In this document: one piece after another, positions 5,989 to 59,680 of the stretch
Layout of the letters: the number at the start of each line of letters is the position of its first letter
Numbering within the stretch: the stretch's first letter is position 1
NCBI RefSeq assembly: GCF_006345805.1
Contig: NC_043002.1
Location: 94,488,001 to 94,552,000, forward strand
Length of the DNA: 64,000 bases
Direction: 5' to 3'
Source: Octopus sinensis
Lineage: Eukaryota
The notes under the pieces: generated by a model
The model's database searches: none
What the model saw: only the letters and a program-made list of their open reading frames with translations
What the model was told of the DNA's origin: nothing
Position numbers and translations under genes: made by a program

Positions 5989-6262
5989 CATCGAAGATGA
6001 TGATGACGACGATGACGATGATGAAGACAACGAATATATCGATGGAAACGATAACGACGGCGATGATGATGATCGTGGTGATAGTAATGGTGGTCATGAT
6101 GGCTATAACAGCGAAAGCGACGACGACGACGACGATGGTGTTATGATGGTGATTATTCTGATTATGATGACCATGGTGGTGGTGGTGGTGGTGGTGGTGG
6201 TGGATGGTGGTGGTGGATGGTGGTGGTGGTGGATGGTGGTAGTGGTGGTGGTGGTGGTTGCG
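5880..6262. repeat. degenerate (GAT/GAC)n then (GGT)n trinucleotide tract
   Basis: Direct reading; accounts for the poly-M/I/V ORFs. Confidence 0.9.
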
Positions 6263-6892
6263 GAAGAAATTTGTTTCAGCAAAAAAGAGTATTTAAAATG
6301 TTATTTGTGCACCTGCGTTCAGTGAATTAATAAAACTGATCATTTGGAAACGATTTCAGAAATAAATTTATGAAGGCAGAATATATATATATGTGTGTGT
6401 GTGTGTGTGTATAAAATAGAATAAGCAACAACACTAATATCTACAACAAGCAATCTCATCAACAACAAAGCAACACCAACAACGTTAACAAGGAAAACGT
6501 GTTAATAACAACAATAACAACAATAACAACTTGCCGCACTACGTCTTGACGTTTTCTAGAAACTTTGCCAAGAAGATTAAATTGTTGAAATTTGATTACA
6601 GTTAGAATGAGTGTAAAAAAGGAAAATATGAATAGCAATTTAACTCTATTTTTAAAAAATATTTTATATCTTATGTATATAGTTTTTTTTTTTTTTTTGC
6701 TCAGTTATTTACTCAAATTTGTGTGTATGTCACCGATATTTCTTTAATGATATTAAGTTTCACGAATATTTGTGGCACCATGAATGGTGTGCCACCATTA
6801 ATATTGGTGCCGCCCTAACTTTTAAATACTGCTAAACTCCAATTAAAACGACTATCAAAATATTCGCTATTGTCCTTAGCTTAATCATAGAG

Positions 6893-7262
6893 CACATGTA
6901 CATATATAAACACACAAGCACACACACACACACATTCATACACACTCACACACACACACACACACGCTCACGCATACTCCCTTATACACACATGTACATA
7001 TATAAACACACAAGCACACACACACACATTCATACACACTCACACACACACACACACACACGCTCACGCATACTCCCTTATACACACATGTACATATATA
7101 AACACACAAGCACACACACACACACATTCATACACTCACACACACACACACACACACACGCTCACGCATACTCCCTTATACACACATGTACATATATAAA
7201 CACTCACACAAGCACACACACACACTCATGCATACTCCCATATACACACATACATAAACACA
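6893..7262. repeat. 96-98 bp higher-order tandem repeat built from (CA)n, about 3.8 units
   Basis: CACATGTACATATATAAACAC restarts at 6893, 6989, 7085 and 7183; GCTCACGCATACTCCCTTATAC recurs in each full unit. Confidence 0.9.
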
Positions 7263-7320
7263 AACACACAAGGAAATGTTTTCGTGTGTGAATATACACA
7301 CACACACACACACATTTATG

Positions 7321-7377
<57 letters not shown>

Positions 7378-7789
7378 AAGTATGTATATATAGATGGTGA
7401 AGTGAATAAACTGTCGATTAAAATTACGCAAAAAGGAAAGTAGCCTTGGTATCTCATTTTTACAGATCACTCCAAAAACCATGATGTTGACTGGATGTTT
7501 GATTTTTATCACTCTCGGTACATATACTCACGTTGCACTGACTTCAGATTGACACTCAAACACTCAAAAATGGTTGTATCGGAGCTTCCGGCGCGAATGC
7601 CAAGCAGTACAGTTTGTCGTTTCCAAATTTCTGGCAGAGTGAATCGCGTCATGGTACTGTTTTTTTTTCTCACACACGATGTCCAACTGGCCCTACTAAG
7701 GTATGTAGTTGACAAAATCCCAAATAAACAATGTGCATGCGCGTTATTAAAAATATAAAATGGTGATAATGCACCCATCGCACCATATA

Positions 7790-7840
<51 letters not shown>

Positions 7841-7897
7841 AATATTATTGGTGAATTTAAGAAATGGAGTTGAACGAAGATTGAACAGAAATCGTTT

Positions 7898-7990
7898 TAT
7901 TTCATTCTACACGTGTTTCGAAAGGCACAATTTACCAAATTCCGATTGAATAATGAGACCATATTGTGTCTTTCTCTTCAGGAAGAAATA
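7898..7990 (-). ncRNA. type I hammerhead ribozyme (mirror copy)
   Basis: Exact reverse complement of 8163-8255: CUGAAGA at 7981-7975, GAAAC at 7919-7915, GUA at 7910-7908. Confidence 0.85.
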
Positions 7991-8162
7991 GGAAATCCGT
8001 TGGAAAAAACAAAAACAGAACAGAGGCGGAGCAAAACAAATCGAACTAGGTTCCTAAGAGCCCATGGCCAAACCATGGAGTTTGGCCATGGGCTCTTAGG
8101 AGCCTAGTTCGATTTGTTTTGCTCCGCCTCTGTTCTGTTTTTGTTTTTTCCAACGGATTTCC

Positions 8163-8255
8163 TATTTCTTCCTGAAGAGAAAGACACAATATGGTCTCAT
8201 TATTCAATCGGAATTTGGTAAATTGTGCCTTTCGAAACACGTGTAGAATGAAATA
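8163..8255 (+). ncRNA. type I hammerhead ribozyme, minimal stem III with palindromic loop
   Basis: Stem I TATTTCTTC (8163-71) / GAA-t-GAAATA (8246-55); CUGAAGA 8172-78; stem II GAAAG-a-CACAAT / ATTGTG-c-CTTTC; GAAAC 8234-38; ACGT loop; GUA with predicted cleavage after 8245. Confidence 0.88.
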
Positions 8256-8305
8256 AAACGATTTCTGTTCAATCTTCGTTCAACTCCATTTCTTAAATTC
8301 ACCAA

Positions 8306-8382
<77 letters not shown>

Positions 8383-8383
<1 letters not shown>

Positions 8384-8531
8384 GAAGACGGTGAGCTGAT
8401 AGGATAGTTAGCCAGCAGGTACAAAATGTTTAGCGGGATTTCTTTCGGCTATGTTCAAATTCTAGTTCAAATTCCAGTGAGGTCGACTTTGCCGATAGTA
8501 GAAAGGATATACATGTGTATGTGCGTTTGCG

Positions 8532-8599
<68 letters not shown>

Positions 8600-8865
8600 A
8601 TACGTGTGTGAGAGAGACGGAGAATCTCTGTATTAAGACAAGTGTAGTAAAGACGTTGAGCTGGCAGAATCGTTTGGACGCCGGGCAAAATGCTTAGCAG
8701 TATTTCGTCCGTCTCCATGTTCAGAGTTCAAATTCCGCCGAGGTCGACTTTGCTTTTCAATCTTTCGGAGACGATAAAGTAAGGACTAGTTGAGTACTGG
8801 GATCGATGTAATCAACTTACTCCTTCCCCGAAGTTACTGGCTTTGTGTCAAAGTTCAAAACCACT
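8383..8865 (+). mobile_element. two SINE-A short-tail copies (about 8383-8500, internally deleted; about 8615-8865) separated by (TG)n
   Basis: Family head, central and tail motifs. Confidence 0.85.
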
Positions 8866-8896: not shown

Positions 8897-9302
8897 GGAT
8901 CTTTTCGGTTTGAACGGCAGTTTTTTCTAGCGGTGTCATATGAAAATGTCACCCATAATTATGACCCTAGTATCGATCTATTGCATTTCAATCTGTTTTA
9001 GGGTTAGGGTTAGGGGTGGGGAGAAGGGTATCTTTTTTCTTCACAAATGTAAATAACCCCAATATGTTTCATAAACGAGGGACATATTCATACGGCACAG
9101 AATGTTTTTTACATCAATAGACGTATTTGATTGGCAGAAATTGAAGAAAAAAACATCAAATATCTTACAAACTATAGAATTTTCTCAATAAAGCCAAGAG
9201 AAAAAGATGTTTTATAAACACATTCTACCAGTATACGAAGTTTGAAATTTTTTAGTTACCTAGAAATTATGTTAAAAACTGCCGTTCAAACCGAAAATAT
9301 CC
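8897..9302 (+). mobile_element. MITE, Merlin-like, copy 1
   Basis: TIR GGATCTTTTCGGTTTGAACGGCAGTTTT; 8-bp TSD TAAATATG (8889-96, 9303-10); internal TTAGGG repeats. Confidence 0.92.
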
Positions 9303-9639
9303 TAAATATGTAACTAGTCGTAATCATATTGTGCTTCATCTTAAAATAAATCAATAATTGCATATGACCATGTTAATTACTGAAGAAACATTCACATACG
9401 CATGCGCACATATCTTTGTGAGAGCGTAATGTTTTTATTAAATGCTCATCATCTCACTTGTGATTCCCTTTCCTTTCTCTTCATTTAAAAAGTTTAGAAA
9501 TAATCTTCCAGACTGCACAAATTTAGCAGTTTAATTTAATAATTTTCTCTACACAAATATGAATCCAATGTATAGCTATGTATATATTTGTAGTCATGTC
9601 TATGTTTATACATGGATATAGATTTTCGTATATGTATGT

Positions 9640-9802
9640 GTATACGTACATACATACACACACACATACACACACACATACACACAATCATACATACAAT
9701 CATACATACATACATACATACATACATACATACATACATACATGCATGCATGCATACATACATATATACATACATACATACATACATACATACATACATA
9801 CA

Positions 9803-9838
<36 letters not shown>

Positions 9839-9947
9839 GGTCATGTAGATCAATGGACGATCTACTACTAACGATAAAATGTATATTGCTTTTAACCTAC
9901 AGCCTTGAACCTGCCTCAATAGATAGACAGGCAGATTCCTAATAAAC

Positions 9948-10011
<64 letters not shown>

Positions 10012-10031
10012 GGAGAGATAGATAGATGGAG

Positions 10032-10112
<81 letters not shown>
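9640..10112. repeat. (CATA)n (9640-9838) and (TAGA)n (9948-10112) microsatellites
   Basis: Direct reading; account for the IYLS/MYVC ORFs. Confidence 0.95.
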
Positions 10113-10113
<1 letters not shown>

Positions 10114-10135
10114 GTGCATAGGTGCAGGAATAGAG

Positions 10136-10370
10136 AAGACGGCGAGCTGGCAGAAATGTTATCACGCCGGGCGAAATGCGTAGCCGTATTTCGTCTGCCG
10201 TTACGTTCTGAGTTCAAATTCCGTCGTGGTCGACTTTGCCTTTCATCCTTTCGGGGTCGATAAATTAAGTACTAGTTACGCACTGGGGTCGGTGTAATCA
10301 ACTTAATCCCTTTGTCTGTCCTTGTTTGTCCCCTCTATGTTTAGCCCCTTGTGGGCAGTAAAGAAAAAAG
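10136..10370 (+). mobile_element. SINE-A long-tail copy
   Basis: Full head and central domain; tail TGTCCCCTCTATGTTTAGCCCCTTGTGGGCAGTAAAGAAA. Confidence 0.93.
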
Positions 10371-14985: not shown

Positions 14986-15739
14986 TTTATCATTACTGTT
15001 ACTGTTATTATTATTATTATTATTATTAATATTATTATTATTATTATTATTATTATCTTTACCATTATTGTTATTAGCAAATCTACCCATCTACGATGGA
15101 GGCATAAAATGAGGGAGGCAAGTCATAACAGCAGTATGTATTGAGAAATGTGTAAATAGACTTGATAGATTACTGGGTGATGTCTTAGGGAAATCACATT
15201 ATTATTGGTGATACAGCATTCTGTTGCAGCTATATGACATGTGTTTGCGACTAAGTGGCCTGTGATGACGATTCACTCCCAAACTGAAATAAGCTCCCAG
15301 CCTCTGTATCACGAATGGTTATGTGGATCATTCATAACGAAAGCCAGAGCTTCCTGCAACCACAACATAAAAAGTACTCAACAAAATGTTTTTGGATATA
15401 CTTTTATTTTAGTTGTTTACGCTATTTTACGCTTGTTTATACTCTTATACATTCAAAGTTCACAAATTTCCTTATTTAAATTATGAATCATATTCCTTTC
15501 GGTAATATCAATATGATTATAAAATTCCTTTGTAGACGATATTTTCTGCTTGGTCGACACTAATTTTCAAATCATTGAAGCCCGTTGCTCTACGCATAAA
15601 GACGCATAACTGGTCATGTGTAAACATCGGAGTGGGCAAAAATACACCTAGATGATCTAAAATCTGGCCCTGTGCCTTGTTTGCTGTGAATGCGCGAGCG
15701 GAATCTTCGAGAATCTGCCCATCTATGATGGGAAATAAA

Positions 15740-16253
15740 GGGATAATATCGCAAATCTAAACCCTCTAAATTCACGAACTATACGGTGAGGAAATCCAGA
15801 GTTAATCCTCGTCGCCGGAATTTTAACAAAAAAATCAAAGGTGAATTATAAATACAAAACTCAATATCCCTAAATAATCATACTTTTCACATTTTTCCCC
15901 GGTTACCTCCCTAATCTCGAAAACATCGTGACCATTGGTCCAGCCGTTTGGCTATGAAAAGGGAACAGACAGGCAGACAGACATAACGCCCATTATAGTA
16001 AGAAGTTGACTTACATCCCTTTGCTTCTTTTGTTAGTTATCTACTCCTTAATTTTTATTTACTTTTTTACGCCCTTAAACTGCAGAATTGCCCTCAAAAT
16101 TCACGAAATAATCATACTTTCTCACATTTTTTGATAAAATCTTCCTGGTTACCTCCTTTGTAATTCCGAAAAACATCGTGACTATTGGCCCAGCCGTTTG
16201 ACCGTGAAGAGGGCACAGACAAACTAACAGACGTAACGCCCATTATAGTAAGA
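15740..16253 (-). mobile_element. two tandem Helitron-like 5' fragments (5' ends at 16003 and 16253)
   Basis: Both start TCTTACTATAATGGGCGTTA followed by GTCTG repeats and CAAACGGCTGG; no CTAG 3' end found. Confidence 0.6.
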
Positions 16254-16719: not shown

Positions 16720-18160
16720 AGAAATGCAGTCAGTAGCAGAAACTTCGTCACCTTGCTCTATTAAGTTAATTAAATGGATAGTTCTGTTTCTATCTATCTT
16801 CGTTTCCATTCCCAACGGAGCCTCTTATTTATGAGATCGTAGAGTACTTCGGAATTTAACACGCAGAAGTACTCCATGTTAGCAAGGAGAGAATGAAAAG
16901 GTAGGTGTAAATGCTTTGACTAATCAATAATGCTTTTCTCAGATACTTTGGCTTTACTTTTACTCGTGTTTAAAAATAATTTAGTAAGGGTTGTTACCTT
17001 TAAGACATTTGATGTAAGTTTATAAATTTCTGAAACGATACCATTCGTTACATAAATTTCTAATCTTAGAAATCTTTGAATAGGCAATTATTCTTAATTT
17101 TTAACCAGAGAAATCTTTGTTTTAATTGTGAACAAAATATGACACTTCTTATCTTCCGTTGGCTGAGAGGGGTGAATACTATCATAACCAAAGCTGAAAA
17201 GAAAGAAAAGGACAAAATATTACCGTTTTTTAAAAAGTAATATCACGGGGTGATGAGGAGTATCGAAAATGGTAAGGGTTTTCTGATTCAAGTGTCAGAA
17301 ACTTATGTGATATTGGTGCGAGTCTTTTCTGTTGTGCAAGCTTAGTTTAACATCTTTCGAACTTCAGGTTACTTAAATATGCTACAGTCTCTCCGATGCA
17401 ACTGGCTGCAAATTGCTGATTTATTTAGAAGAATTAAAGAAAGCGTTATCTCCAACAAGAGTTGAAATAATAATAAGAAAAACACTGAAACAATGCAAGA
17501 TTCGATAAGATAGGCAAACATTTGCCTTCTACACACTTTATGTAATAGTCTTGGCATACATTATTTGCTTAAACAATTGTTGCTTTTATGCAATCACCTT
17601 AAAAGGCCATCAAAACCATATCATATAATTGTTGTAATTTCCTTCTAACTACAAAATCATTCATTTATTCAGTGGTGTTATTGTCCCAATGAAGCTGATG
17701 CAGCTAATAAAACTTCATCTTCACTTACACTTTGTATTCATAATAGCTGTGTTTCAAATTTATCACCGACATTTATTTTTTTTATTTTCACTTTTAGTAG
17801 AAATCCCAGAAAATTGATTAATGTTAAACTATACCTGCCTTCATTTGATTCTGTATATCGTTTGTATTTGAATTTTAATCTATTTCAATTGAATTTCTTT
17901 TAATTGTTTCAGATATTTTGACAGACTTCTATATATAGTTTCGTCATTACTTCAGAGGTGGAATTTTATGGAGATTTTGTATGCGTATCATTATCGGTCA
18001 CGAGATTCATGCGCTTATATATATATATATATATATATTTAACAATTAAGGATAACTTCTTAATAAGGAATCTTAACAAGAAATTATCAGGTAGATAGCG
18101 TGAAAAACCTCATAAGAGAAAAATTTCGGAAATAATTCTTTCTTATTGAACATATTAATT

Positions 18161-18522
18161 TATATATAGAGGGCATTATTACATATAAATGCCTCACGCT
18201 AAGAGGGACATAAGTAATTTCTACCGAAAAATTTTACTAATCATACCCATGTGCTTCGTTGGAATAGAGCAGTTGGCTGTTCGACTTTGACGGTACTGGT
18301 CGTTTATTTATGATATGTTCAGAATCAGTCTTACTGATGAGCATGGTCGCAAATTCTTCTGCGGTAAGTGCGAAATCACAGGTGATATAAGACTAAATTC
18401 ATTTTTTTAATGTCTTGCTTTGAAAAATTGCATTGGGTATGATTAGTAAAATTTTTTGGTAGAAATGACTTATGTCCCTTTTAGCGTGAGGCATTTATAT
18501 GTAATAATGCCCTCTATATATA
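18161..18522. mobile_element. (TA)n-embedded element with 89-bp inverted arms enclosing a hammerhead
   Basis: Arms 18161-18249 and 18434-18522, 3 mismatches. Confidence 0.85.
18327..18394 (+). ncRNA. type I hammerhead ribozyme
   Basis: Stem I AGTCTTA (18327-33) / TAAGACT (18388-94); CUGAUGA 18334-40; stem II GCA/TGC plus inner CGCA/TGCG; GAAA 18372-75; stem III TCA-cagg-TGA; AUA triplet with predicted cleavage after 18387. Confidence 0.85.
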
Positions 18523-18555
<33 letters not shown>

Positions 18556-18560
18556 ATATA

Positions 18561-18613
<53 letters not shown>

Positions 18614-18655
18614 GTAATATATATATATTATATATATGTATATATATATATTATA

Positions 18656-18742
<87 letters not shown>

Positions 18743-18770
18743 ATATATGTATATATATATATATATATAT

Positions 18771-18832
<62 letters not shown>

Positions 18833-18833
18833 A

Positions 18834-18925
<92 letters not shown>

Positions 18926-18930: not shown

Positions 18931-19404
18931 ATGTGTGTTTGATGCATATGCGTATGCTCGGACAAAATATATTAGTGTATATTTATATGCACATGTTTCG
19001 TTGATAGTGTGAAAATGTTTATGTATTTTTTATATACATTTAGGATTTGTATGCGAATGTAATGATATTTGCAAAACTGTGGGTATGTACATAATAATTT
19101 AAATAAATGTACGTCTGTTAGCAAAGATTTCAACATGGGAGTGTATGAGGCCTTTTGTAAAATGCGCCAAGTTGTACTTATGTGTGCATGTATGTATGTA
19201 TGTGTGTGTATATACACACACATATATATATATATATATATAGTAATAATTGAGTAGTTGAATGAATTATCTTATTATGGATAATTCGGTTAACCGATAC
19301 CTGGGTAGCAAATTCACGTCAGAAAAACACGGTTGAAGCTACATGCCTAGGGCAGAGATCACGTGCTATCGTGTAGAAATTTGTGTGTTTTTGTTAAATA
19401 CAAA

Positions 19405-19520
19405 TAAATGAAAGAATGCACCCCTTATTCCTTCGAAATTAGGAATATGCAGCCTTCGAAACATATGTCGAAAATAAAATAAAGGAATTTTGTTAATTCG
19501 TCGTTCAACTCCATTCTTTC

Positions 19521-19525
<5 letters not shown>
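19405..19525 (+). mobile_element. truncated relative of the 7.8-8.3 kb element, with a half hammerhead and 14-bp inverted ends
   Basis: TAAATGAAAGAATG / CATTCTTTCATTTA ends; TTCGAAAC-ATAT-GTC at 19455-69; shares TCGTTCAACTCCATT with 8276-90. Confidence 0.75.
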
Positions 19526-22961: not shown

Positions 22962-23384
22962 GGATCCTTTCGGTTTGAACGGCAGTTTTTTCTAGCGGTG
23001 TCATATGAAATTGTCCCACATACCTATGACCCTAGTATCGATCTATTGCATTTCAATCTGTTTTAGGGTTAGGATTAGTTAGGGTTAGGGTGGGGGAAGG
23101 GTATCTTTTTTTCTTCACAAATGTAAATAAACCCAATCTGTTTCTTAAACGAGGGACATATTCATACGGCACAGAATTTTTTTACCTCAATAGACGTCAG
23201 TGATTGGTTGAAATTGCATAAATTGAAGAAAAAAACAACAAATATCTTACAAACCATAGAATTTTCTCAATAAAGCCAAGAGAAAAAGATGTTTTATAAA
23301 CACATTCTACCAGTATACGAAGTTTAAATTTTTTTAGTTACCTAGAAATTATGTTAAAAACTGCCGTTCAAACCGAAAAGATCC
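22962..23384 (+). mobile_element. MITE, Merlin-like, copy 2
   Basis: Same TIRs; TSD AAAAGGAG (22954-61, 23385-92). Confidence 0.93.
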
Positions 23385-24984
23385 AAAAGGAGTTGCAGGC
23401 CAGCGGTATTTGGTGGCATTATAAATCTACAGATGATAAAGCTACCACTGAAAGCTTGAGAGAGGCTTGAGAGAACAAACCCAGAGAAAGAATTCGATAA
23501 ATCTTGTGTTTAAGAACAAACAGTAATAGTATACGTCACACTCAAATTTTTAAAAAATAGTTTTTACTGGATACACAATCCTTTTCCTAATACTTGTAAT
23601 AATTATAGCCGGAGATAAAATGTATTTCTTCCTTTTCAATTATTCCTTTAGCTGTGCTACTTCAATTTCATGTGCTGGATAAAATCATTGTTTCCTATGT
23701 TGTCATCTAATGCAATGGACGACAGCGAAATTCGAAACGAAGTAACTTGATGAAGTACTCATGTGACAGCAAAAGGTATCTTTTCTCTAATTGTTTATCG
23801 GCTGGAATCAATTGCATGCAATTTCCTTTATAAAAGTGATAAAATGAGATTGTCCAGTCAGTACCACAAAGTAGAGGGAAGATCTCAGCAAGCGTAGATT
23901 GCAATTTCCCAAAAGCAACTAGTTTCATTGAACCTATTTCGCAAATGTCAGCAATTTTCGTTTAATTTCTCTAATGTCCTTAACAAAGGCACAAATGTTA
24001 TACAATCTCGTTTCCTTTGTCCTATAATTTTCACGCATTGCTCCTATCTAAGGAATCAATAAAATTAAGAGTAGACGTTATCTTCATTAGATCAAAGTAG
24101 TCACAGAAAAACGTTTGAATAAAATAATTTTTAAATGTGACATCTTTGCCGTAATGAAAGGTGGGGGTGATGCAGAAAATAAAAGAAAAGAATGCAAGAA
24201 CTGAAGACAAATTGCTAAATTTTATTTAGCAATTAATTGTGGTTTGTTTATATTTCCGATAAATTAAAAGAAATCTCTTTTAAATTTTAATTAATGTTTG
24301 CGATTCAATCATTTTAAATTTAATGTTACGGCGATCTTATTTTACCTTATTTAATTTTTTTAATAGAATTTTTTAGAGTAAAATATTTTTTAAAGAACTT
24401 ACAGTTACAATAAATTTCTGTTATATTGTCAGACAATGTGCCACAAGAAAATGATTCCGTCATTTTGCAGATCATATCAATAATGATGGCAAAAATATTA
24501 TAAGATATAATACGTTATGTTTTTACAAAAAATTTGAGCACAGGAGGAGCGGAGGGAGAAGAAATAGAGAAAGAGAGATTTGGAGGAAGGGATGATGTCT
24601 ATGAAATGCAAACAGACTCAGACTGAATTAACTATTTATCAAATAGTTAATTACATCCCATTAGATCCCCTTTTCTCCAAATTAACATTGAAAACGTGTT
24701 TTACATTCGTAGAATAGAGAGAATAATTTTGGTATTCGCGTTTAGACTGAACTGATTCCGTTTCATTTGATAAAAAGTATGAGTCACGTTTGGCTCTACC
24801 GAAACATTGAAAATACTGTGTATGATCAAATAAATCAGTAGCTTTGCCAAGAATATTATTCGAAACTGAACACGGAGTCTGATATTTGGAATTCCATATA
24901 CATAATCGAAAATATTACAGTACAACATTAAAGGCTATTTGTTATTACAGTCTGGCTTCACGTACAATCTCATGAATTATCTCT

Positions 24985-32963: not shown

Positions 32964-34076
32964 GAGAGAGAGAGGGAAAGAGAGAGAGAGAGAAAGAAAA
33001 AAAGCTATTGCTTCCACTAAACAAATCATTTACAATTCTAACTTCAATTTAGAACAACTGTTGTCTGGAGTTTGTATTTTGAAAGTAAAGGTAAAAGATT
33101 CTTCATAAATTCCATAATTGGTATTTTGACTTTTGTTCTAAGTAAACAGTGGTTTACAAAGATTTTGTAAATTTTGTGAATTTTCAGTATCAGACAAACT
33201 TCAGAAATTGTCTTCGAATATTTGCTTTAAATATAGGTCTAGCCCAATAGACTCATTTATTGATTTTAATAATAGTTATTATAAATATAAATTAGTATAT
33301 AATTTTTTTCTTTTTTAAAATTAATTGAGTATCGAAGGAAGTACACAACGTTACCGCAGTGAAGTTCCAATTGAAGCTCATCATTATGCCAGCTCGATTT
33401 TTCTGATTTTCGCTGTCTTCCACATTTTTTTCTAATTCATATTTTAGAAACTCTATCATTACGATTTATTTTTTTTTAAAGGCATTTAATTATATATTTA
33501 TTGGACTTTCAGAATAGCTGTCTTACGTGAATCGGAATTTCTCGGATTTTTTTTCGGCATTTTTCCACATTTTATAATACACATGAGCGGGCTTTTTTAA
33601 TAATAAAACTTTATAATCCACATTTTTCAAACATCCACCCACCCCTTCATTGCACCTTTGGAACACAAAACCACTATAATTTTTCTTTTCTCTTTTGCTT
33701 TTTTTTTTTAACTTTTCGTCATTAATGTAGTTCATATTTTGAAATACTTATAATTTATATTTTTATAGAAAAAATTTGGAAAATCTATCATGCATAAATC
33801 AAAATTTCTCCATCTTCTTTTGTTTTTTTAACCTTGAATGAAGAGGGGAAAGCCACAATTTTTTCTGTTAAAATGCGTATTGTATGTATTTATCTTTCGA
33901 AATGTGGAATGTTATAACATTTAGGATATATTGTGAAACACGCTTAACATCATCGTAAACGTAGCTCTCTTTCTACTGCAAAATTCAAAACAAATGTATT
34001 TCACAAATAAAAATTAACCTAGTCAACCCATTATTTTGCTGTTTTCACAATATGACAGAGCAAATTTACATCTTAC

Positions 34077-34152: not shown

Positions 34153-36229
34153 CTGAAAGACACGAAGCATAAGCCTTCGATCCCCGCGTTTAGTAATTTT
34201 CAGTCTTATTTTACTTGACTTGAATAGAAGTTGAGAGCTCTACTGTATATATGACGTTGAGAAGGCAATAAAGTACATCTCGACTTTGTTCTATAGAGCA
34301 TGTTAGCAGTCAGAAATGTCCTTTTGCAATCAAAATTCCTGATATGACTTTTTGAACTTTGGCCTCAGCCCAATATCATTTTAAAGTGGAACAAATTCTT
34401 CCACCACTATTTTTGTTTTCTCATTACTGATATCTCGGAATTACCCAGACCGGTATTTTAAACACAAATAAACATCCTAAAGTCTATGAGACACGTCTCT
34501 GGACAGCTCTCCCAGGTGTGAGCAATACACTTGAATGTCATCTTCTCGTATACACTTTTCCTTCCCCAATTTCATTTGAATAACTTTAACTTGGAGAGAA
34601 ATGTGGAGAGGGTTGATTTTACCTTGATAAGGTTTAACTTCATTTATTTGCGACTGCAAATTAATTTCATTGAGTTTTATGAGTCCTGCTTGATGTTTCT
34701 TACTTCATCACAAAGAAAGTACTAAACTCTTGCAAGAATTCAACAACTTTTTAAAAAGGGGAATAGAAACATTCAGGCAGTTTCCCATTACTGTCCACCG
34801 AACTTCTGTATGCAACAATAGTTCAAAATCTTTATCGTTCTCAATGCAGAGCTGTTAAAACAGTGAGAAACTGAGGGTATGCGCCTTGATTTTATTTATT
34901 GCTGTGCACAACTATTTGTTAAGTCTACCACTTAGGTTATTTGCAACATGTGCAATTACGCTAGGTATAGCATTTTCAATAAACTGAAGCAGCGATGACA
35001 ACCGACAACGATGGTCTTCTCTCTACAGCTCAAAAGCGAAATACTAACTACATATTTGTGACTGTTTCTAGTTGTCTTACAAATAATAAGCTTTTGAGCC
35101 AAACATTAATCACTGACGAAGCAAACATGTGCAAGAAACAAACCTGTATTGCTTGGCAAAGGGGATTCATCTAACTGTGAACTAAATTTGGTTGCTAAGC
35201 GTGTTTCACAATATATGCATTTTTACAGAAAAAAATGTGACTTTCCCCTCTTCATTCAAGGTTGAAAAAACAAAAAAAGATGGAGAGATACCGATTTATG
35301 CATGATAGATTTTCCAAATTTTTTCTATAAAAATGGGGGCACTAGGAGTGTGGCCTGGGAGACAAGGGGGCGGTAGTTCGAAAAAGTTTGGGAACCACTG
35401 GTGTAAAGTATATGCTGTATACGTAATGATTCTGTAGATTCTGTGTAATGTGGGCTTGAGTGTGTAGACTATGTTCTGTATGGTTGTGATTATGTAGGGC
35501 ATGTGTTGTGTGGGAAGAGGTCGTGTAGAGCATTACTGTGTGCATTGTGATTCAATAGGGTTTATTTATTGTGAGTTGTGATTGCATAGAGTACGTTTTG
35601 TATGCGTTGTGTTATAATATTGAGAGATAACTGTGTAAAGTATGTATTGTATAAATGTATTATTTTATAATTTATTGGACATTGGTTGCAAAGGGTGAGT
35701 GTTGAATGATCTATACAGAGCATGCACTGTTGAATTTATAGTGTTTGGGTTGTGTCAAGCAGAGTTAATTTCAGGGCCGTGTTTAGAATTGTAAGCCCTG
35801 CTACGCTTCTTTATGTCCGTGTCTTCAAACAGCTTTAACTCTCCAATTTTTGATGCATTATTTTCAATTATGTTGGACAAGCTTTCACTTCTTGAAATTT
35901 GATTTGTATGCATTTGGATGCATTTGGATAGTGTGTAGATATGTGTGATTTGATGCATATTTGGCAGTTGGTTTTAGCATATCGGGAGAAATCATAAAAG
36001 CTCCCTCGTTGGCTCCTTTAGGTTACAGTTGTTGTTCTCTTATTACATTTCAGGAAGGGTTTTGTGATTAAACATCGATTTTGCGCAGCCAAAATCAAAC
36101 CTCATATTTTTCTTTCTTAAAAAAAACCTTGAGCTGTTTTAAACTTTCATGCTGATGCGCCTCCCTTTGTCTGGTCTTTTTTAATTGACCCCTTTGTATT
36201 CTTTTACTTGTTCCCATCAATGGTAGAAA

Positions 36230-36734: not shown

Positions 36735-37166
36735 GGATCTTTTCGGTTTGCACGGCAGTTTTTCTAGCGGCGTCATATGAAATTGTCACCCATAATTATG
36801 ACCCTAGAATCGATCTATTTGCATTTCAATCTCTTTTACGGTTAGGGTTAGTTAGGGTTAGGGTTAGGGGTGGGGGAAGGGTATCTTTTTTTCTTCACAA
36901 ATGTAAATAAACTCAATCTGTTTCTTAAACGTGGGACATATTCATACGGCACAGAATGTTTTTTAACTCAATGGACGTCATCGATTGGTTGAAATTGCAG
37001 AAACTGAAGAAAAAAAACAACAAATATCTTACAAACTATAGAATTTTCTCAATAATGCCAAGAGAAAAAGATGTTTTATAAACATATTCTATCAGTATAC
37101 GAAGTTTAAAATTTTTTAGTTACCTAGAAATTATGTTAAAAACTGCCGTTCAAACCGAAAAGATCC
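36735..37166 (+). mobile_element. MITE, Merlin-like, copy 3
   Basis: TSD AAAATATT (36727-34, 37167-74). Confidence 0.93.
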
Positions 37167-37580
37167 AAAATATTGGATTGTCTGAAAAGTTGCTTTGTAG
37201 TGTTTGTTTCGTTCTTTTATTTTACGACCTGAGATCAAATTTCGCAAAATTAGCTTTACTTTTTATCCTTTAGGAAATAATAGATTAAGTATTATCAACT
37301 ATCCCTTTCCTACAAAATTTGTCACAAAAAATGTTTATGTTAGAAACAATTACAAATGACTTTTGAATTTGTCTTTATCTACACTAGTTCCTGTACATTT
37401 CTTTTTACGTGCTTTGTGTGTTAGGCATAGCGTAGTGAGCCTGAAACACGTCTAGGAATTATTATTTTGGCAAGCAGTCTTTTATAGTTTCTGTCTTGTT
37501 CTGAGGGTCAGTCATTTTGTTACTCGCTTAATCTTGTTGGAACACATCGCTTCTTAGGTACATATTACAAGTTGTTAATA

Positions 37581-39570: not shown

Positions 39571-39846
39571 AATTATCATCTTTTCAACAGCTTCAGGAGA
39601 GTTTCTACAACGTCACCAAGTACATCCTTGTATCCTCCAAGTGCGTGTACAACATTATTATTTGCGTAAGTGTACACTACGTTAGTTTTACATGGTTGCT
39701 AGATTTGTATTGCTTCCGGTGTGTTTTTTTTTTCTTTTTTCCGATTCCTAAATTTGCTGTATCGAATATTTGCAATGTCAGTTGTATTACATCGTAGGAC
39801 GGTAACTGCGGGTCACGTGGGATGCGTGATTGATGCTAAGTGTTTT

Positions 39847-40263
39847 GGATCATTGCGGTTTGAGCGGCAGTTTTTAACATAATTTCTAGGTAACTAAAAC
39901 ATTTTAAACTTCGTATACTGGTAGAATGTGTTTATAAAACATCTTTTTCTCTTGGCTTTATTGAGAAAATTCTATAGTTTGTAAGATATTTGTTGTTTTT
40001 TTCTTCAATTTCTGCAATTTCAACCAATCACTGACGTCTATTGAAGTAAAAAAACATTCTGTGCCGTATGAATATGTCTCTCGTTTAAGAAACAGATTGG
40101 GTTTATTTACATTTGTGAAGAAAAAAAGATACCCTTCCCCCCACCCCTAACCCTAACCGTAAAACAGATTGAAATGCAATAGATCGATACTAGGGTCATA
40201 ATTATGGGTGACAATTTCATATGAGACCGCTAGAAAAAACTGCCGTTCAAACCGAAAAGATCC
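39847..40263 (-). mobile_element. MITE, Merlin-like, copy 4
   Basis: TSD AGTGTTTT (39839-46, 40264-71). Confidence 0.93.
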
Positions 40264-40499
40264 AGTGTTTTAACGTATGATGGTGGTTATGTAGAGTATA
40301 TGGTGTGCTTCCAAGTGATGTGTTGTGAATGTGTAGAGCATGTGCTTTGTAAATTGTGTTTAAGTGCTGTAAAGTGATTATATTAATCTGGCAGAGCTCA
40401 TCTCTCTCGGTCTGATCACAACTAAATTTTTCAAGAAACATAACGAAAGGGGGCAAAGAGTGGGGAAGGGAGGTATAAACAAACTGAGAGATAGAAAGA

Positions 40500-48296: not shown

Positions 48297-48661
48297 TTTT
48301 ACTTGTTTCAGTCTTTCGACTGCGGCCATGCTGGGGCACCGCACCGCCTTGAAGAACTTTTAATCGAATGAATCGACCCTAGAACTTATTTTTTAAAGCC
48401 CGGTACTTGTTCTATCGTTCCCTTTTTGCTGAACCGTTAAGTTACAGGGACGTGGTGGAGGTGGACAAACAAAGACACACGCAGATATACACATATATAA
48501 GGCGTGCGTCTTTCAGTTTCCGTCTACCACATCTACTCACAAGCTTTTGGTCGACCGGACGCAATATTAGTAGACACTTGCCCAAGGTGCCAGGTAGTGG
48601 GACTGAACCCGGAATCATGTGGTTGGGAACCTAACTTCTAACCACTCAGCCACACTTGCGC
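48297..48661 (-). mobile_element. SINE-B copy
   Basis: Same head, core and tail as 31255-31701. Confidence 0.9.
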
Positions 48662-48675
48662 ATATATATATATAT

Positions 48676-49033
<358 letters not shown>

Positions 49034-54329: not shown

Positions 54330-54950
54330 GTTATAATGGATTAGATCCTTCTAGTATTTCCCCCATCTCTCTACTATTGCTGCTAAAGCAGTCTCGAATC
54401 GAACAGCTAGACTTGATCTGTCCAAATCTAGCTGTTCGATTTCTTATTTGTGTTTGTAAACCACAACCAGCGTTCTTCCCTTCCAACATCCTCGGTTTGT
54501 TCCAAAAATTGGCCATGTAATTCTTTCTCTTTCCAAATACTTATTCTGTCATACTTACTTCTGTTCTTGAATTCGCCTCATGTTTTAGTAACTTTTTGCA
54601 TATTTCTAGTCTCCGTACTATTCATTCTTCACTGCGAGGCAACATAGTTTTCAACCCCAATATCGCAGAGTTAACGATGTCTTCTGCAATACTCTGGCTC
54701 CCCACTTTCTTGTTAAGTAGAACCCGTCGATAATACCTTTTGTGTGGTGCACATTGTGCATTGTGAGCAGCTTCCTGGTCCTCCTATCTAAGTCCGGTAG
54801 CTCGGTCTTTGTCCATTTTAGAAGAAGAACAGAGTGTCTAGATGTTGACATACGCTTTGATAATATTCTCTTCATTTCATTTTGTTTCGAGTATTTTATT
54901 ACTTTTATTGCATTGACTGTTAGATGTGTTTGGGTTTTGCTCATTCGATA
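54330..54950 (-). pseudogene. R4/Dong-like non-LTR retrotransposon fragment
   Basis: WTKTELPDLDRRTRKLLTMH...FYLTRKWGAR and KELHGQF...WLW motifs. Confidence 0.75.
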
Positions 54951-55429
54951 CAGTGTTTTTTACAAAGTAAATTATGTGGAAAACTTTTTTAATGAGGAAC
55001 TTTTACATGGAGTGGTATGATTTGAATTATTTTTAAGATAGTTCGACGTTTGGAGAAAAAAATTTCAGTTTGCAAAGTGAAGTTACTTCTCCATTTGCAA
55101 ACTAACAAAATAACTACTTCATGTTTTCAAATGCAAAATGAAAAACACGTTTTTATGGACATTAAAAGCAAAGAGAAGAAAACGAATTGGATTTCTAAAG
55201 AGAATACATATACTTCAAAACCTTTCAAAAGTAACGATTTTAAGAATAAATAAATGCACTATATTGAACAATTAAACAGCATGGTTGGTGTTAACAACAA
55301 GAGGGGTAACGCCAGAGATGTACCCTTTCTTCAAGAAAAAGGATTAGTGGAAAGCTTTAATTTAAATGGAAAGCTGTTTCAACCTCCCTTTATTTGCTCA
55401 CACAATATCCAAAACACGAGCTTTAGATA

Positions 55430-55640: not shown

Positions 55641-56155
55641 AAAGATTATCCAATTAGTCCTTAATGTTTGATCTTGGGAAGCTACAAACAAACTTTCTGT
55701 CTCTCTTTTCAGCTTTCCTTTCTGAAACCATAACCATGTCTCACTACTACTATTTGCTGCATCTATCTTAGGGAATCTACCAAGCAACACCTCTGCCAGT
55801 CAGATAATTTCTGTTCTTTTTCCTGGTTCTTAACTTCGTTTGGGTTTTTGGTTTCCTTATGTCTTGCTGTGACCATAGCAGCTTTTAAGAAACTTTCTTT
55901 CCTCCTAAGTAGGTAATCCTACTTAGGAGTCTATATCTACTCTAGCTAACTCTACGCAGTATTCTACTGATATTAACCCTCTTCCGCCTTCCTTTCTAGT
56001 TAGGTGTAATCTTGTTACTTCTGCCCTTGGGTTGAGAACTCCGTTCATATTGAATTCCTTCCTAGTTCTTCTGCCTAGCTTTGATAATTCAGTTTTTGTC
56101 CAATCTACAAAAGCTGCTGAGTATCTAAGTAATGATACTGCCCAAGTATTTACAG
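55641..56155 (-). pseudogene. R4/Dong-like fragment (post-RT region)
   Basis: AVNTWAVSLLRYSA..DWTKTEL...NPRAEVTRLHLTRKEGGRGL...WLWFQKGKLKRETESLFVASQDQTLRTNW. Confidence 0.82.
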
Positions 56156-58696: not shown

Positions 58697-59680
58697 TGCG
58701 GATCTCCAGATATTCTGTCTAAACAATGACCAGTGTCAAACGGGCCTTTCCACAGCTCGTCTCCCTCACTGAGCTACAGTCCTCGATCAAGAAGGGACCG
58801 AGACAGGGTGATTGGCATCTGGAATGTTGCCAGGCACTCACTGCCCTTTACCAGATGTGCAATTCGATCAGTGGAACATCTACTCTCGAGTTCTATAGAG
58901 GGTTAGGGGAGCAACGACGCACTCGGAGAGTCGCTAGGCGTCGAGCCGGGGACGATGGATAACTTCTAGAAATCCCTAGCTTGGCAATGCTACCGGTGGG
59001 GGGGGGGCACTGCTGGTATGACATAAACTCTACAGGGATGGAAGTACTGTCAGACGGACCTGCCCGAGATGCGCGCAGTGCGACAAAACCGTTCTGCACC
59101 CACTCGTCCAGTGTTCTTGCATTACTGACTTGTGGTGTTATGTTGAACAGCTGTTATCACGTGTAGGACGGATCCGGCCATCATCCGAGTCTATAGTGAA
59201 AATCGATCCACCGCCTTCCATTGGTCCGGAAGGGCAGGCAATTTTCCTCTGTCTGACAGCAGTAGCAAAAAAGGATGTATGGTGGACCAGGCTGAAAGGA
59301 CTGAAGGCAGATACTTTTCTCTTCGGCGAATCCCTCATCAACTTTTTCAAATTTCACTTGGAAAGGAAGATGCGGGTAGAGAGAGAAGTGCTGCCCCCAG
59401 TACATTTGCTAAAACGTGAGTGAATGGAGCGAAAATGGTCCGTGTGAGTGGATCTAGGCTAGCGAATTTGAGAAGGAGAAGGGTGCCCTCAAAGTGTTGA
59501 ATGGTTCGGGATTGGTGGAGTACCTGAGTCAACCCCAATTAGGGAACTTTTATTGTTATGTTGTTCTTGTTTGATATTATTGTTATAATTGCGTAGTCGG
59601 TGTTTTGTGTAAAAACCCCCACTGTCCACGTCAACTGTATTGTCCCCTATATGTGGGCCCAGGTGACTAATAAATGAAAT
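58697..59680 (+). mobile_element. Tx1-clade LINE 3' fragment (ORF2 C-terminal zinc finger, 3' UTR)
   Basis: MDNF*KSLAWQCYR..GALLV*HKLYRDG..TCPRCAQCDKTVLHPLVQC...AVAKKDVWWTR; ends TGTCCCCTATATGT...AATAAATGAAAT. Confidence 0.85.

What the first reader, a model, noticed from the sequence alone, without database searches (positions are those of the whole stretch)
8163..8255. Intact type I hammerhead ribozyme with a palindromic mini stem III
Seen: every core nucleotide is present (CUGAAGA, GAAA, GUA), with a 9-bp stem I, an 11-bp interrupted stem II and stem III reduced to AC-[ACGT]-GU. Established: minimal type I hammerheads with palindromic stem III loops occur in Penelope-like element repeats and non-LTR retrozymes and cleave as dimers. 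Inference: a self-cleaving RNA module hidden in what the ORF track shows only as two mirror 64-aa ORFs.
Basis: partly seen in the sequence, partly recalled or inferred. Interest (0 to 1): 0.95.

Follow-up and report, generated by a model that had tools for sequence, protein, structure and literature searches.

The report
Hammerhead ribozyme in octopus retroelement palindrome
The stretch really does encode a complete hammerhead self-cleaving RNA motif, but it is one of thousands-type "retroelement" hammerheads already known from invertebrates, sitting here as two mirror-image truncated element copies inserted in a TA repeat of an octopus genome.

Summary
Window 8163-8255(+) carries every invariant hammerhead nucleotide: helix I is 9 bp with one bulge, helix II has 10 of 11 positions paired, and helix III is 2 bp with the palindromic loop ACGU. 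The predicted cut follows A8245.

It is not chance. A loose descriptor expects 0.013 hits per shuffled window. Independent relatives in Octopus vulgaris and O. bimaculoides keep the core, varying only at N7, H17 and loop 3, while helix II changes by compensating substitutions.

- The window is Octopus DNA.
- The motif lies in the outer part of a near-perfect palindrome, arms 7830-8073 and 8080-8323, with one mismatch.
- Both arms end in (TA)n, so an identical hammerhead sits on the minus strand at 7898-7990.
- A second, unrelated hammerhead lies at 18327-18394, and a decayed relative lies at about 19.4 kb.

Head-to-head 5'-truncated copies, (TA)n targets and a hammerhead near the 3' end are the published signature of Penelope-like elements and their non-autonomous derivatives.

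At this locus the ribozyme is probably an inert relic. It has no same-sense partner for the dimer, and any read-through transcript would fold into a 244-bp hairpin. No Rfam model detects it. No reverse transcriptase was found nearby. Cleavage is untested.

Verdict: a new member of a known kind, of modest interest.

The parts
8163..8255 (+). Type I hammerhead motif. Helix I 8163-8171/8246-8255; core CUGAAGA 8172-8178; helix II 8179-8189/8223-8233 with interior 8190-8222; GAAA 8234-8237; helix III 8237-8238/8243-8244 with loop ACGU 8239-8242; predicted cleavage between A8245 and G8246.
   Evidence: Sequence; descriptor hit; homologues with an intact core in L005 and L010; consensus helix II with compensatory changes.
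7898..7990 (-). Identical mirror copy of the hammerhead on the minus strand. CUGA starts at 7981; the predicted cut lies between 7908 and 7907.
   Evidence: The reverse complement of 7898-7990 equals 8163-8255 exactly; descriptor hit on the minus strand.
8080..8323 (+). Right arm of the palindrome: a 5'-truncated element copy read 5'->3' on the plus strand, with its 3' end running into (TA)n.
   Evidence: the repeat finder I1; base-by-base check shows a single mismatch, 8051/8102.
7830..8073 (-). Left arm of the palindrome: the same element copy in inverted (head-to-head) orientation, with its 3' end running into (TA)n.
8074..8079 (.). Asymmetric 6-nt centre (CATGGA) between the arms.
8256..8310 (+). 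3' tail of the element, with the family-conserved block AACTCCATT (8282-8290) just before the TA repeat.
   Evidence: Alignments A1, A2 and A4; nhmmer homology to window 19415-19520 and L005 442-569.
8311..8384 (.). (TA)n microsatellite flanking the right arm; presumed target.
7785..7841 (.). (TA)n microsatellite flanking the left arm; presumed target.
19390..19522 (+). Decayed relative of the same family. It keeps helix II, GAAAC-AUAU-GUC and the 3' tail ending in (TA)n, but the CUGANGA box is lost.
   Evidence: blastn/nhmmer; alignments; CM R1 hit at 27 bits, E 0.0035.
18327..18394 (+). Second, unrelated type I hammerhead motif: AGUCUUA-CUGAUGA-GCAU..GUGC-GAAA-UCA[CAGG]UGAU-A|UAAGACU. It lies between the 90-nt inverted arms 18160-18249/18434-18523, next to (TA)n.
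   Evidence: Descriptor; inverted repeat; the enforced hammerhead fold is -17.1 against an MFE of -19.7 kcal/mol.

Best explanation
The feature is a genuine hammerhead ribozyme motif. It belongs to a short, AT-rich Octopus retroelement family of the Penelope-like-element (PLE) / non-LTR-retrozyme kind.

The conserved module is about 150 nt: the hammerhead, then a roughly 50-nt tail ending in ..AACUCCAUU.., which abuts (TA)n. At this locus two copies, truncated at the same 5' point, lie head to head in a (TA)n microsatellite. They form a 494-bp palindrome with one hammerhead on each strand.

Inferred mechanism, not shown here:
- In transcripts of tandem or multimeric source copies, two hammerheads pair through the palindromic ACACGUGU segment to build an extended helix III.
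- They cut after H17, releasing unit-length RNA with 5'-OH and 2',3'-cyclic phosphate ends.
- That RNA is copied into (TA)n targets by a PLE-type reverse transcriptase/GIY-YIG endonuclease supplied in trans.
- The inverted duplicate arises during integration, for example by snap-back or twin priming.

This particular copy is most likely a young but dead-on-arrival relic. It has no same-sense partner in cis, and any read-through RNA would fold into a long perfect hairpin rather than a hammerhead.
For: Shown here:
- The core and helices are complete.
- The descriptor expects 0.013 loci per shuffled window against 2 independent loci observed. A broader descriptor finds 8 motifs in 263 kb of Octopus DNA against 0.48 in shuffles.
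- The window is Octopus: 97-99% identical to O. vulgaris OX597819.1.
- Independent family members keep the core, with variation only at N7 (A/G/U), H17 (A/C) and loop 3 (ACGU/AUGU/AUAU). These are L005:481-577 in O. vulgaris and L010:3866-3944 in O. bimaculoides.
- Core boxes are 6/7 and 8-10/12 identical between intact copies, against 38-53% in the helix II interior.
- RNAalifold recovers helix II flush against CUGANGA and GAAA, with 5-7 pairs changed on both sides.
- The centroid fold of the L005 copy is the hammerhead junction, z = -1.7.
- RNAcofold of two copies forms the intermolecular ACACGUGU helix.
- Homology among copies covers only the 3' ~150 nt, and all copies end in (TA)n.
- Inverted-arm length varies among the two hammerhead families in this window (244, 90 and about 25 nt), and one relative has no inverted partner.

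From the literature:
- PLE insertions are 5'-truncated, often have an adjacent inverted 5'-truncated copy, and carry hammerheads near the 3' end within pseudo-LTRs. A (TA)n insertion bias is reported for some PLE clades (PMC8557442).
- Dual minimal hammerheads 100-700 bp apart on opposite strands have been reported (PMC4209133).
- A 2-bp helix III with a tetraloop is typical of invertebrate hammerheads (PMC7229834).
Against: - No Rfam hammerhead model matches this or any of the related Octopus motifs, even at E<=10.
- The hammerhead fold is not the MFE of the isolated window RNA, and the stretch is no more stable than shuffles.
- No RT or GIY-YIG coding sequence was found in the window. The search was partial: Pfam on 25 ORFs plus a motif grep.
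- There is no tandem copy or pseudo-LTR here.
- Only three intact-core family members and a few decayed ones could be sampled, so the conservation and covariation rest on a very small n.
- Loop 1-loop 2 tertiary contacts cannot be recognised.
- Cleavage is untested, and published PLE minimal hammerheads are weak in vitro.
Confidence: 0.72

Rival explanations
1. Chance look-alike. An AT-rich stretch happens to contain CUGANGA, GAAA and UH with pairable flanks, and there is no RNA function at any time.
For: No Rfam hammerhead hit. Folding z-score is about 0. The helices are AU-rich. A whole-genome scan of tens of thousands of windows would give hundreds of chance hits at 0.013 per window. The sibling at 19.4 kb lacks the 5' box.
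Against: Independent homologues in two Octopus species keep all invariant core positions while N7, H17, the loops and the helix sequences drift with compensation. A second, unrelated hammerhead lies in the same window, and three more lie in 3 kb of L005, all in the same (TA)n/inverted-repeat setting. The excess over shuffles is 8 against 0.48.
Confidence: 0.06
2. A foldback or MITE-type DNA transposon with long terminal inverted repeats that targets TA. The hammerhead-like motif is incidental cargo and plays no role in propagation.
For: The palindromic or inverted-repeat structure flanked by TA repeats recurs at 8 kb, 18 kb, weakly at 19 kb, and three times in L005. One L005 palindrome (1938-2254) has no hammerhead hit. 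No RT was found nearby.
Against: Family members do not share fixed TIRs. Arm length is 244 nt in the window copy and about 25 nt in the 19-kb copy, and the L005 443-600 copy is solo with no inverted partner. Homology is limited to a common 3' module with variable 5' ends, which is the pattern of 5'-truncated retrocopies. Four different element families carry a hammerhead at the equivalent place with the core intact, which points to selection at the RNA level.
Confidence: 0.12
3. The hammerhead-bearing element is real, but the near-perfect palindrome is an assembly artefact, such as a fold-back or chimeric long read. In that case only one arm exists in the animal.
For: The arms are 243/244 complementary with a 6-nt centre. 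Craig et al. note that PLE tandem/inverted structures often trouble assemblies. In L010 an assembly gap begins exactly in the helix III palindrome of a family copy. The orthologous stretch of the O. vulgaris reference could not be fetched for comparison.
Against: One mismatch and an asymmetric centre are not what a pure fold-back read gives. Similar head-to-head pairs with diverged arms and 11-184 nt spacers occur at 18 kb and three times in the independent O. vulgaris reference assembly. The class of structure is therefore real.
Confidence: 0.1

Closest known systems
Minimal and small-helix-III type I hammerheads of Penelope-like elements (Cervera & de la Pena 2014, PMC4209133)
   Same: Type I topology; full CUGANGA/GAAA/UH core; G10.1-C11.1; longer-than-usual helix II; helix III reduced to 2 bp with a palindromic loop, implying dimeric action; low GC; many dispersed, truncated copies, including pairs on opposite strands 100-700 bp apart; position near the element's 3' end.
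   Different: There is no unpaired nucleotide between A9 and G10.1, which those authors list as a conserved feature of PLE min-HHRs. Helix II is much longer: about 11 bp, extendable to about 20 interrupted pairs. No flanking RT/GIY-YIG ORF or pseudo-LTR was found here. Octopus copies have not been described as far as my literature search shows.
PLE insertion architecture: 5'-truncated copies with an adjacent inverted 5'-truncated copy, and microsatellite targets (Craig et al. 2021, PMC8557442)
   Same: Head-to-head inverted copies with their 3' ends outward; both ends in (TA)n with no discernible target-site duplication; hammerhead near the 3' end.
   Different: Both arms are truncated at the same point, giving a near-perfect palindrome rather than a short inverted copy next to a longer unit. 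The clade explicitly reported there with a (TA)n bias, Naiad, lacks canonical hammerheads. The autonomous partner is unknown.
Metazoan non-LTR retrozymes (Cervera & de la Pena 2020, PMC7229834; Li et al. 2026 preprint, 10.64898/2026.07.22.740005)
   Same: A short (150-450 nt), low-GC, non-coding unit carrying one type I hammerhead with a 2-bp helix III plus tetraloop. The preprint's abstract proposes these are non-autonomous PLE derivatives.
   Different: The defining head-to-tail tandem arrangement is absent. Copies seen here are solo or inverted. No loop 1-loop 2 tertiary motif is recognisable. circRNA expression is unknown.
Rfam Hammerhead_1 (RF00163) and related hammerhead models
   Same: Same catalytic core and three-way junction.
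   Different: The models do not score this sequence, or any of the related Octopus motifs, even at E<=10. The likely reason is the very long helix II insertion and the tiny helix III.

Membership tests
Hammerhead ribozyme, type I | Invariant core nucleotides C3 U4 G5 A6 (N7) G8 A9, G12 A13 A14, an A15.1-U16.1 pair, and H17 not G | tested here: met
   C8172-A8178, G8234-A8237, A8237-U8244, A8245.
Hammerhead ribozyme, type I | Three helices around the core, with helices II and III capped and helix I open; a G10.1-C11.1 closing pair | tested here: met
   Helix I is 9 bp plus a bulge. Helix II has 10 of 11 positions paired, with G8179-C8233 closing it. Helix III is 2 bp plus loop ACGU.
Hammerhead ribozyme, type I | Score at or above the gathering threshold of a curated hammerhead covariance model | tested here: not met
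   No hammerhead family was listed at the gathering threshold or at E<=10. The same holds for the related Octopus motifs.
Hammerhead ribozyme, type I | Core conserved and helices kept by compensatory change in relatives | tested here: met
   Three independent copies have an intact core, differing only at N7, H17 and loop 3. Helix II pairs changed on both sides in 5-7 cases. The n is very small.
Hammerhead ribozyme, type I | Loop 1-loop 2 tertiary interaction typical of canonical natural hammerheads | tested here: inconclusive
   No closed loop 1 is evident beyond the bulged U8249, and the interior of helix II is long and variable. Mussel and PLE variants also lack the canonical contacts.
Hammerhead ribozyme, type I | Site-specific self-cleavage | not testable with these tools
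   This needs in vitro transcription of monomer and tandem dimer.
Penelope-like element (autonomous) | An ORF with a telomerase-like RT plus a GIY-YIG endonuclease | tested here: not met
   Pfam on 25 of the window's ORFs gave no RT or GIY-YIG hit above threshold; the best RT-related match was a weak zf-RVT hit at E 0.026, below the cut-off. A motif grep for RT and GIY-YIG signatures in the window found nothing. The test was partial.
Penelope-like element (autonomous) | Pseudo-LTR, that is, a direct partial tandem copy | tested here: not met
   No direct repeat of the arm exists in the window.
PLE-type insertion (autonomous or non-autonomous) | 5'-truncated copies sharing a 3' end, with an adjacent inverted 5'-truncated copy | tested here: met
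   Homology among copies is confined to the 3' ~150 nt. Head-to-head arms measure 244, about 25 or 0 nt in different copies.
PLE-type insertion (autonomous or non-autonomous) | Microsatellite ((TA)n) insertion bias without a clear target-site duplication | tested here: met
   All copies seen end in (TA)n: window 8 kb on both sides, 18 kb, 19 kb, and L005 four times.
Non-LTR retrozyme | Head-to-tail tandem repeats of 150-450 bp, each with a type I hammerhead | tested here: not met
   Only inverted or solo copies were seen, and no same-sense hammerhead of this family lies elsewhere in the window.
Non-LTR retrozyme | Expression as a self-processed linear and circular RNA | not testable with these tools
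   No transcriptome data are available here.
MITE / foldback DNA transposon | Family-constant terminal inverted repeats and a target-site duplication | tested here: not met
   Arm length is not constant within the family, and one member has none. Any target-site duplication is unreadable inside (TA)n.

The most novel reading that the evidence does not exclude
Octopus genomes may carry a large, undescribed lineage of hammerhead-bearing non-autonomous retroelements. They would have an unusually long helix II that no Rfam model recognises, insert specifically into (TA)n, and characteristically integrate as head-to-head palindromes. Their read-through transcripts would be long perfect hairpins. 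These could be abundant substrates for Dicer or for the very active cephalopod ADAR editing system, so the elements might matter to the host as dsRNA sources rather than as ribozymes.
Probability: 0.15. Interest if true: 0.5.

Novelty: new member of a known kind. Interest (0 to 1): 0.3.

Why it matters
The finding adds cephalopods to the animals in which retroelement hammerheads can be seen. It also shows that these copies escape the curated Rfam models, so standard annotation leaves them invisible.

The local picture suggests a family that could help explain how Penelope-like elements integrate. Several different hammerhead families each sit near the 3' end of short elements that land in (TA)n as inverted pairs. 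It may also help explain why TA microsatellites in Octopus are so often interrupted by palindromes.

It does not change what is known about hammerhead catalysis or about the link between hammerheads and PLEs or retrozymes.

Tried and rejected
- Rfam at gathering and at E<=10 on the window region, the 18-kb motif and L005 found no hammerhead family. The sub-threshold plant-miRNA matches only reflect the long hairpin.
- The 64-aa mirror ORF has no homologues among 5.8 billion proteins and no exact record. I rejected it as a gene.
- A metagenome pattern scan for the family's two conserved blocks gave one unrelated bacterial-looking hit.
- I tried to fetch the orthologous site in the O. vulgaris reference. 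Exact look-ups of three window ORFs failed. A concatenated query of 40 ORF translations from window 1-18 kb found no annotated protein. The palindrome could therefore not be checked in a second assembly.
- Pfam scans of 25 ORFs and a grep for RT and GIY-YIG motifs found no PLE protein in the window. ARAGORN found no tRNA.
- Thermodynamic support for the window copy is absent, so I did not use stability as an argument.
- One extra descriptor hit, L008:3585, is within chance expectation, and I did not count it as a hammerhead.

Full report
**1. The observation**

The sequence at 8163-8255(+) reads UAUUUCUUC-CUGAAGA-GAAAGACACAA-[33 nt]-UUGUGCCUUUC-GAAA-C-ACGU-GU-A|GAAUGAAAUA.

- Every invariant hammerhead position is present: C3 U4 G5 A6 G8 A9, G12 A13 A14, the A15.1-U16.1 pair, and H17 = A.
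- The G10.1-C11.1 pair is G8179-C8233.
- Helix I is 9 bp with U8249 bulged.
- Helix II has 10 pairs out of 11 positions, with an A8184/C8228 mismatch.
- Helix III is only A-U and C-G, capped by ACGU, so A15.1 to U16.1 (ACACGUGU) is a perfect 8-nt palindrome.

The two 64-aa ORFs exist. They have no homologue in the protein collection and no exact record.

**2. Is it more than chance?**

A deliberately loose type I descriptor finds 0.013 loci per dinucleotide-shuffled copy of the window (300 shuffles). The real window has two independent loci plus a mirror copy.

Two results do not help the case:
- No Rfam hammerhead model matches at the gathering threshold or at E<=10.
- The hammerhead fold of the isolated RNA is -11.9 kcal/mol when enforced, against an MFE of -14.2. 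The stretch is no more stable than its shuffles.

**3.

The motif lies in the outer third of a near-perfect palindrome. The arms are 7830-8073 and 8080-8323, with a 6-nt centre (CATGGA) and a single mismatch at 8051/8102.

- An identical hammerhead therefore sits on the minus strand at 7898-7990. This is also why the ORFs mirror each other.
- Each arm reads 5'->3' away from the centre, so the copies are head to head. Each runs at its 3' end into a (TA)n microsatellite (7785-7841 and 8311-8384).
- An RNA spanning the whole palindrome folds into one hairpin of about -432 kcal/mol.
- The only Rfam matches are sub-threshold miRNA-precursor models, which simply register that hairpin.

**4. The organism**

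A transposase-like ORF at 56.9-57.6 kb is 98% identical to an Octopus vulgaris protein. Window 46.5-64 kb aligns at 94-99% per segment (97-99% over the long segments) to O. vulgaris GCA_951406725.2 OX597819.1:29818453-29841397. The window is Octopus DNA with 36% GC.

I could not fetch the orthologous position of the palindrome, roughly 38 kb further along that chromosome. No annotated protein lies close enough to serve as a handle.

**5. Relatives**

Inside the window, 19390-19522 is a decayed relative. It keeps helix II, GAAAC-AUAU-GUC and the 3' tail, and it also ends in (TA)n, but its CUGANGA box is gone.

I then sampled about 199 kb of other Octopus DNA through transposase paralogues (loci L002-L010). 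This gave two independent members with an intact core:
- L005:481-577(-), O. vulgaris OX597817.1: UUUUCACUUUC-CUGAGGA-GAAGAUUGCAUUG..CAGUGGAAUUUUC-GAAAC-AUGU-GUC|GAAAGUAAAAA. Its tail ..AACUCCAUUU.. abuts (TA)n.
- L010:3866-3944(-), O. bimaculoides: CUUUCC-CUGAUGA-GAAGGUUACAA..UUGUAAUCCUUU-GAAAC-AUAUG. It is then cut off by an assembly gap.

Across the three intact copies:
- The core differs only at N7 (A, G, U), at H17 (A, C) and in loop 3 (ACGU, AUGU, AUAU). Loop 3 stays self-complementary in each, allowing G-U pairs.
- Pairwise identity is 6/7 in the 5' box and 8-10/12 in GAAA-helix III-UH, against 38-53% in the interior of helix II and 18-54% upstream.
- RNAalifold, on two and on three sequences, recovers helix II flush against CUGANGA and GAAA, with 5 and 7 pairs changed on both sides.
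- The centroid structure of the L005 copy is the hammerhead three-way junction.

A covariance model built from two copies (R1) also picks up weaker, decayed candidates at window 33823-33921 and L006:14334-14434. The latter again has a palindromic loop 3 (AGCU) but a damaged 5' box.

It is not met. The sample is small, but it points the other way.

**6. Other hammerhead families in the same setting**

- The window holds a second, unrelated type I motif at 18327-18394: helix I 7 bp, helix II 4 bp plus an inner hairpin, helix III 4 bp. It lies between 90-nt inverted arms (18160-18249/18434-18523) next to a long (TA)n tract.
- In L005, the first 3.1 kb holds four elements in a row, each embedded in (TA)n:
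  - the solo family copy;
  - a head-to-head pair of another hammerhead family (CUGAUGA..GAAAC-AAUU-GUA), arms 1534-1658/1746-1870;
  - a palindrome without a hammerhead hit (1938-2254);
  - a 287-nt-arm palindrome carrying a third hammerhead type.
- With a broader descriptor, 263 kb of Octopus DNA holds 8 motifs, against 0.48 in shuffles.
- Rfam detects none of them. Its silence reflects the model library rather than the sequences.

**7. What it is**

These features match the published description of Penelope-like elements and their derivatives:
- Insertions are heavily 5'-truncated and often carry an inverted 5'-truncated copy at the 5' side.
- Hammerheads lie near the 3' ends, in the pseudo-LTRs.
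- Target-site duplications are hidden by a microsatellite insertion bias, which is (TA)n in some clades.
- Non-autonomous derivatives share the 3' end with their autonomous partner (PMC8557442).

Cervera and de la Pena (PMC4209133) describe the following:
- Metazoan type I hammerheads have a helix III of 1-2 bp capped by a 2-4 nt palindromic loop.
- The PLE variants have a longer helix II and a conserved G10.1-C11.1 pair.
- Dual motifs occur 100-700 bp apart on opposite strands. That is the arrangement here, with the CUGA boxes at 7981(-) and 8172(+).

The 2020 retrozyme paper notes that a 2-bp helix III with a tetraloop is typical of invertebrates (PMC7229834). A 2026 preprint argues in its abstract that animal retrozymes derive from PLE pseudo-LTRs.

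I therefore read the feature as a pair of 5'-truncated copies of a short PLE-type, retrozyme-like element. They were integrated head to head into a (TA)n tract. With 0.4% arm divergence, the insertion is young.

**8. How it most likely works (inference)**

- In multimeric transcripts of source copies, two hammerheads pair through ACACGUGU to form a stable helix III. RNAcofold predicts this intermolecular helix.
- They cleave after H17, and the unit RNA is reverse-transcribed at a nicked (TA)n target by a PLE enzyme acting in trans.
- Both arms stop at the same nucleotide around a 6-nt loop. That suggests snap-back (self-primed) synthesis of one cDNA rather than two independent truncations.
- At this locus the ribozyme is probably inert. 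It has no same-sense partner of its family in the window, and read-through RNA would be a perfect hairpin.

**9. Membership**

- **Hammerhead:** the core, topology and conservation criteria are met. The curated-model criterion is not met, and cleavage is untested.
- **Autonomous PLE:** not met. No RT or GIY-YIG ORF and no pseudo-LTR were found, though the search was partial.
- **PLE-type insertion architecture:** met.
- **Non-LTR retrozyme:** the defining tandem arrangement is not met.
- **MITE/foldback:** arm length is not constant within the family, and one member has none, so this is not met.

**10. Rivals**

- **Pure chance:** about 6%.
- **TA-targeting foldback DNA transposon with incidental motifs:** about 12%.
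- **Real element but artefactual palindrome:** about 10%. This could not be excluded, because the second assembly could not be reached at this site.

**11. Verdict**

The class has been known since 2014-2020 and is abundant in invertebrates.

What is new is modest. These are Octopus members, with a long helix II that Rfam misses, and with a consistent (TA)n and palindrome insertion pattern.

Novelty: new member of a known kind. Interest: about 0.3.

Noticed in passing
window 18160-18523: A second, unrelated type I hammerhead motif at 18327-18394 (AGUCUUA-CUGAUGA-GCAU..GUGC-GAAA-UCA[CAGG]UGAU-A|UAAGACU). It lies between 90-nt inverted arms that are 97% complementary, directly next to a ~400-bp (TA)n tract. 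No other copy was found in the 263 kb sampled.
   Followed up: partly
window 19244-19522: A decayed relative of the 8-kb element. It has TA repeats on both sides and a ~25-nt inverted copy of its own 3' end at its left edge. The hammerhead's 3' half is kept (GAAAC-AUAU-GUC), but the 5' box is lost.
   Followed up: yes
L005 290-3100 (O. vulgaris OX597817.1): Four short elements in a row, each embedded in (TA)n: one solo hammerhead copy, two hammerhead-bearing head-to-head pairs of different families, and one palindrome without a hammerhead. TA microsatellites appear to be hot spots for such insertions in Octopus.
   Followed up: partly
L010 3795-3865 (O. bimaculoides CM046601.1): A run of N (an assembly gap) begins exactly inside the palindromic helix III of a family copy. 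This hints that these tandem or inverted structures break assemblies.
   Followed up: no
window 56931-59420 (+) and about 34486-35216 (-): Remnants of a hAT-like ZBED5/FAM200-type transposase, with stop-interrupted frames. The first is 98% identical to an annotated O. vulgaris 'hypothetical protein', and it served to identify the organism.
   Followed up: partly
window 8897-9301, 22962-23388, 36735-37170, 39842-40271; also 8464-8492, 8725-8753, 10211-10239: A ~430-bp interspersed repeat (93-95% identical to a copy in L002, on either strand) and short repeats containing a tRNA-T-arm-like string (AGTTCAAATTCC..GGTCGACTTTGC). These are probably SINEs. ARAGORN finds no tRNA gene.
   Followed up: no
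window 7990-8163 and L005 1602-1801, 2675-2780: Rfam lists sub-threshold matches to plant and animal miRNA-precursor models (for example MIR847 at 67 bits against a gathering score of 184). These are generic hits to long perfect hairpins, not miRNA genes.
   Followed up: yes
window 54654-54959 (-), 55926-56204 (-), 15520-15756 (-): By eye, the ORF fragments resemble the C-terminal part of a LINE reverse transcriptase (..LTRKEGGRGL..) and a Pif1/Helitron-type helicase end. Pfam gave no hit, so these identifications are unconfirmed.
   Followed up: partly
window 6873-7400, 8500-8620, 9600-10130, 18516-18910, 48660-48810: Very dense and long microsatellites ((GT)n, (TA)n, (CATA)n, (GATA)n and (GGT)n at 6171-6279). 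These create most of the long mechanical ORFs in the window.
   Followed up: no
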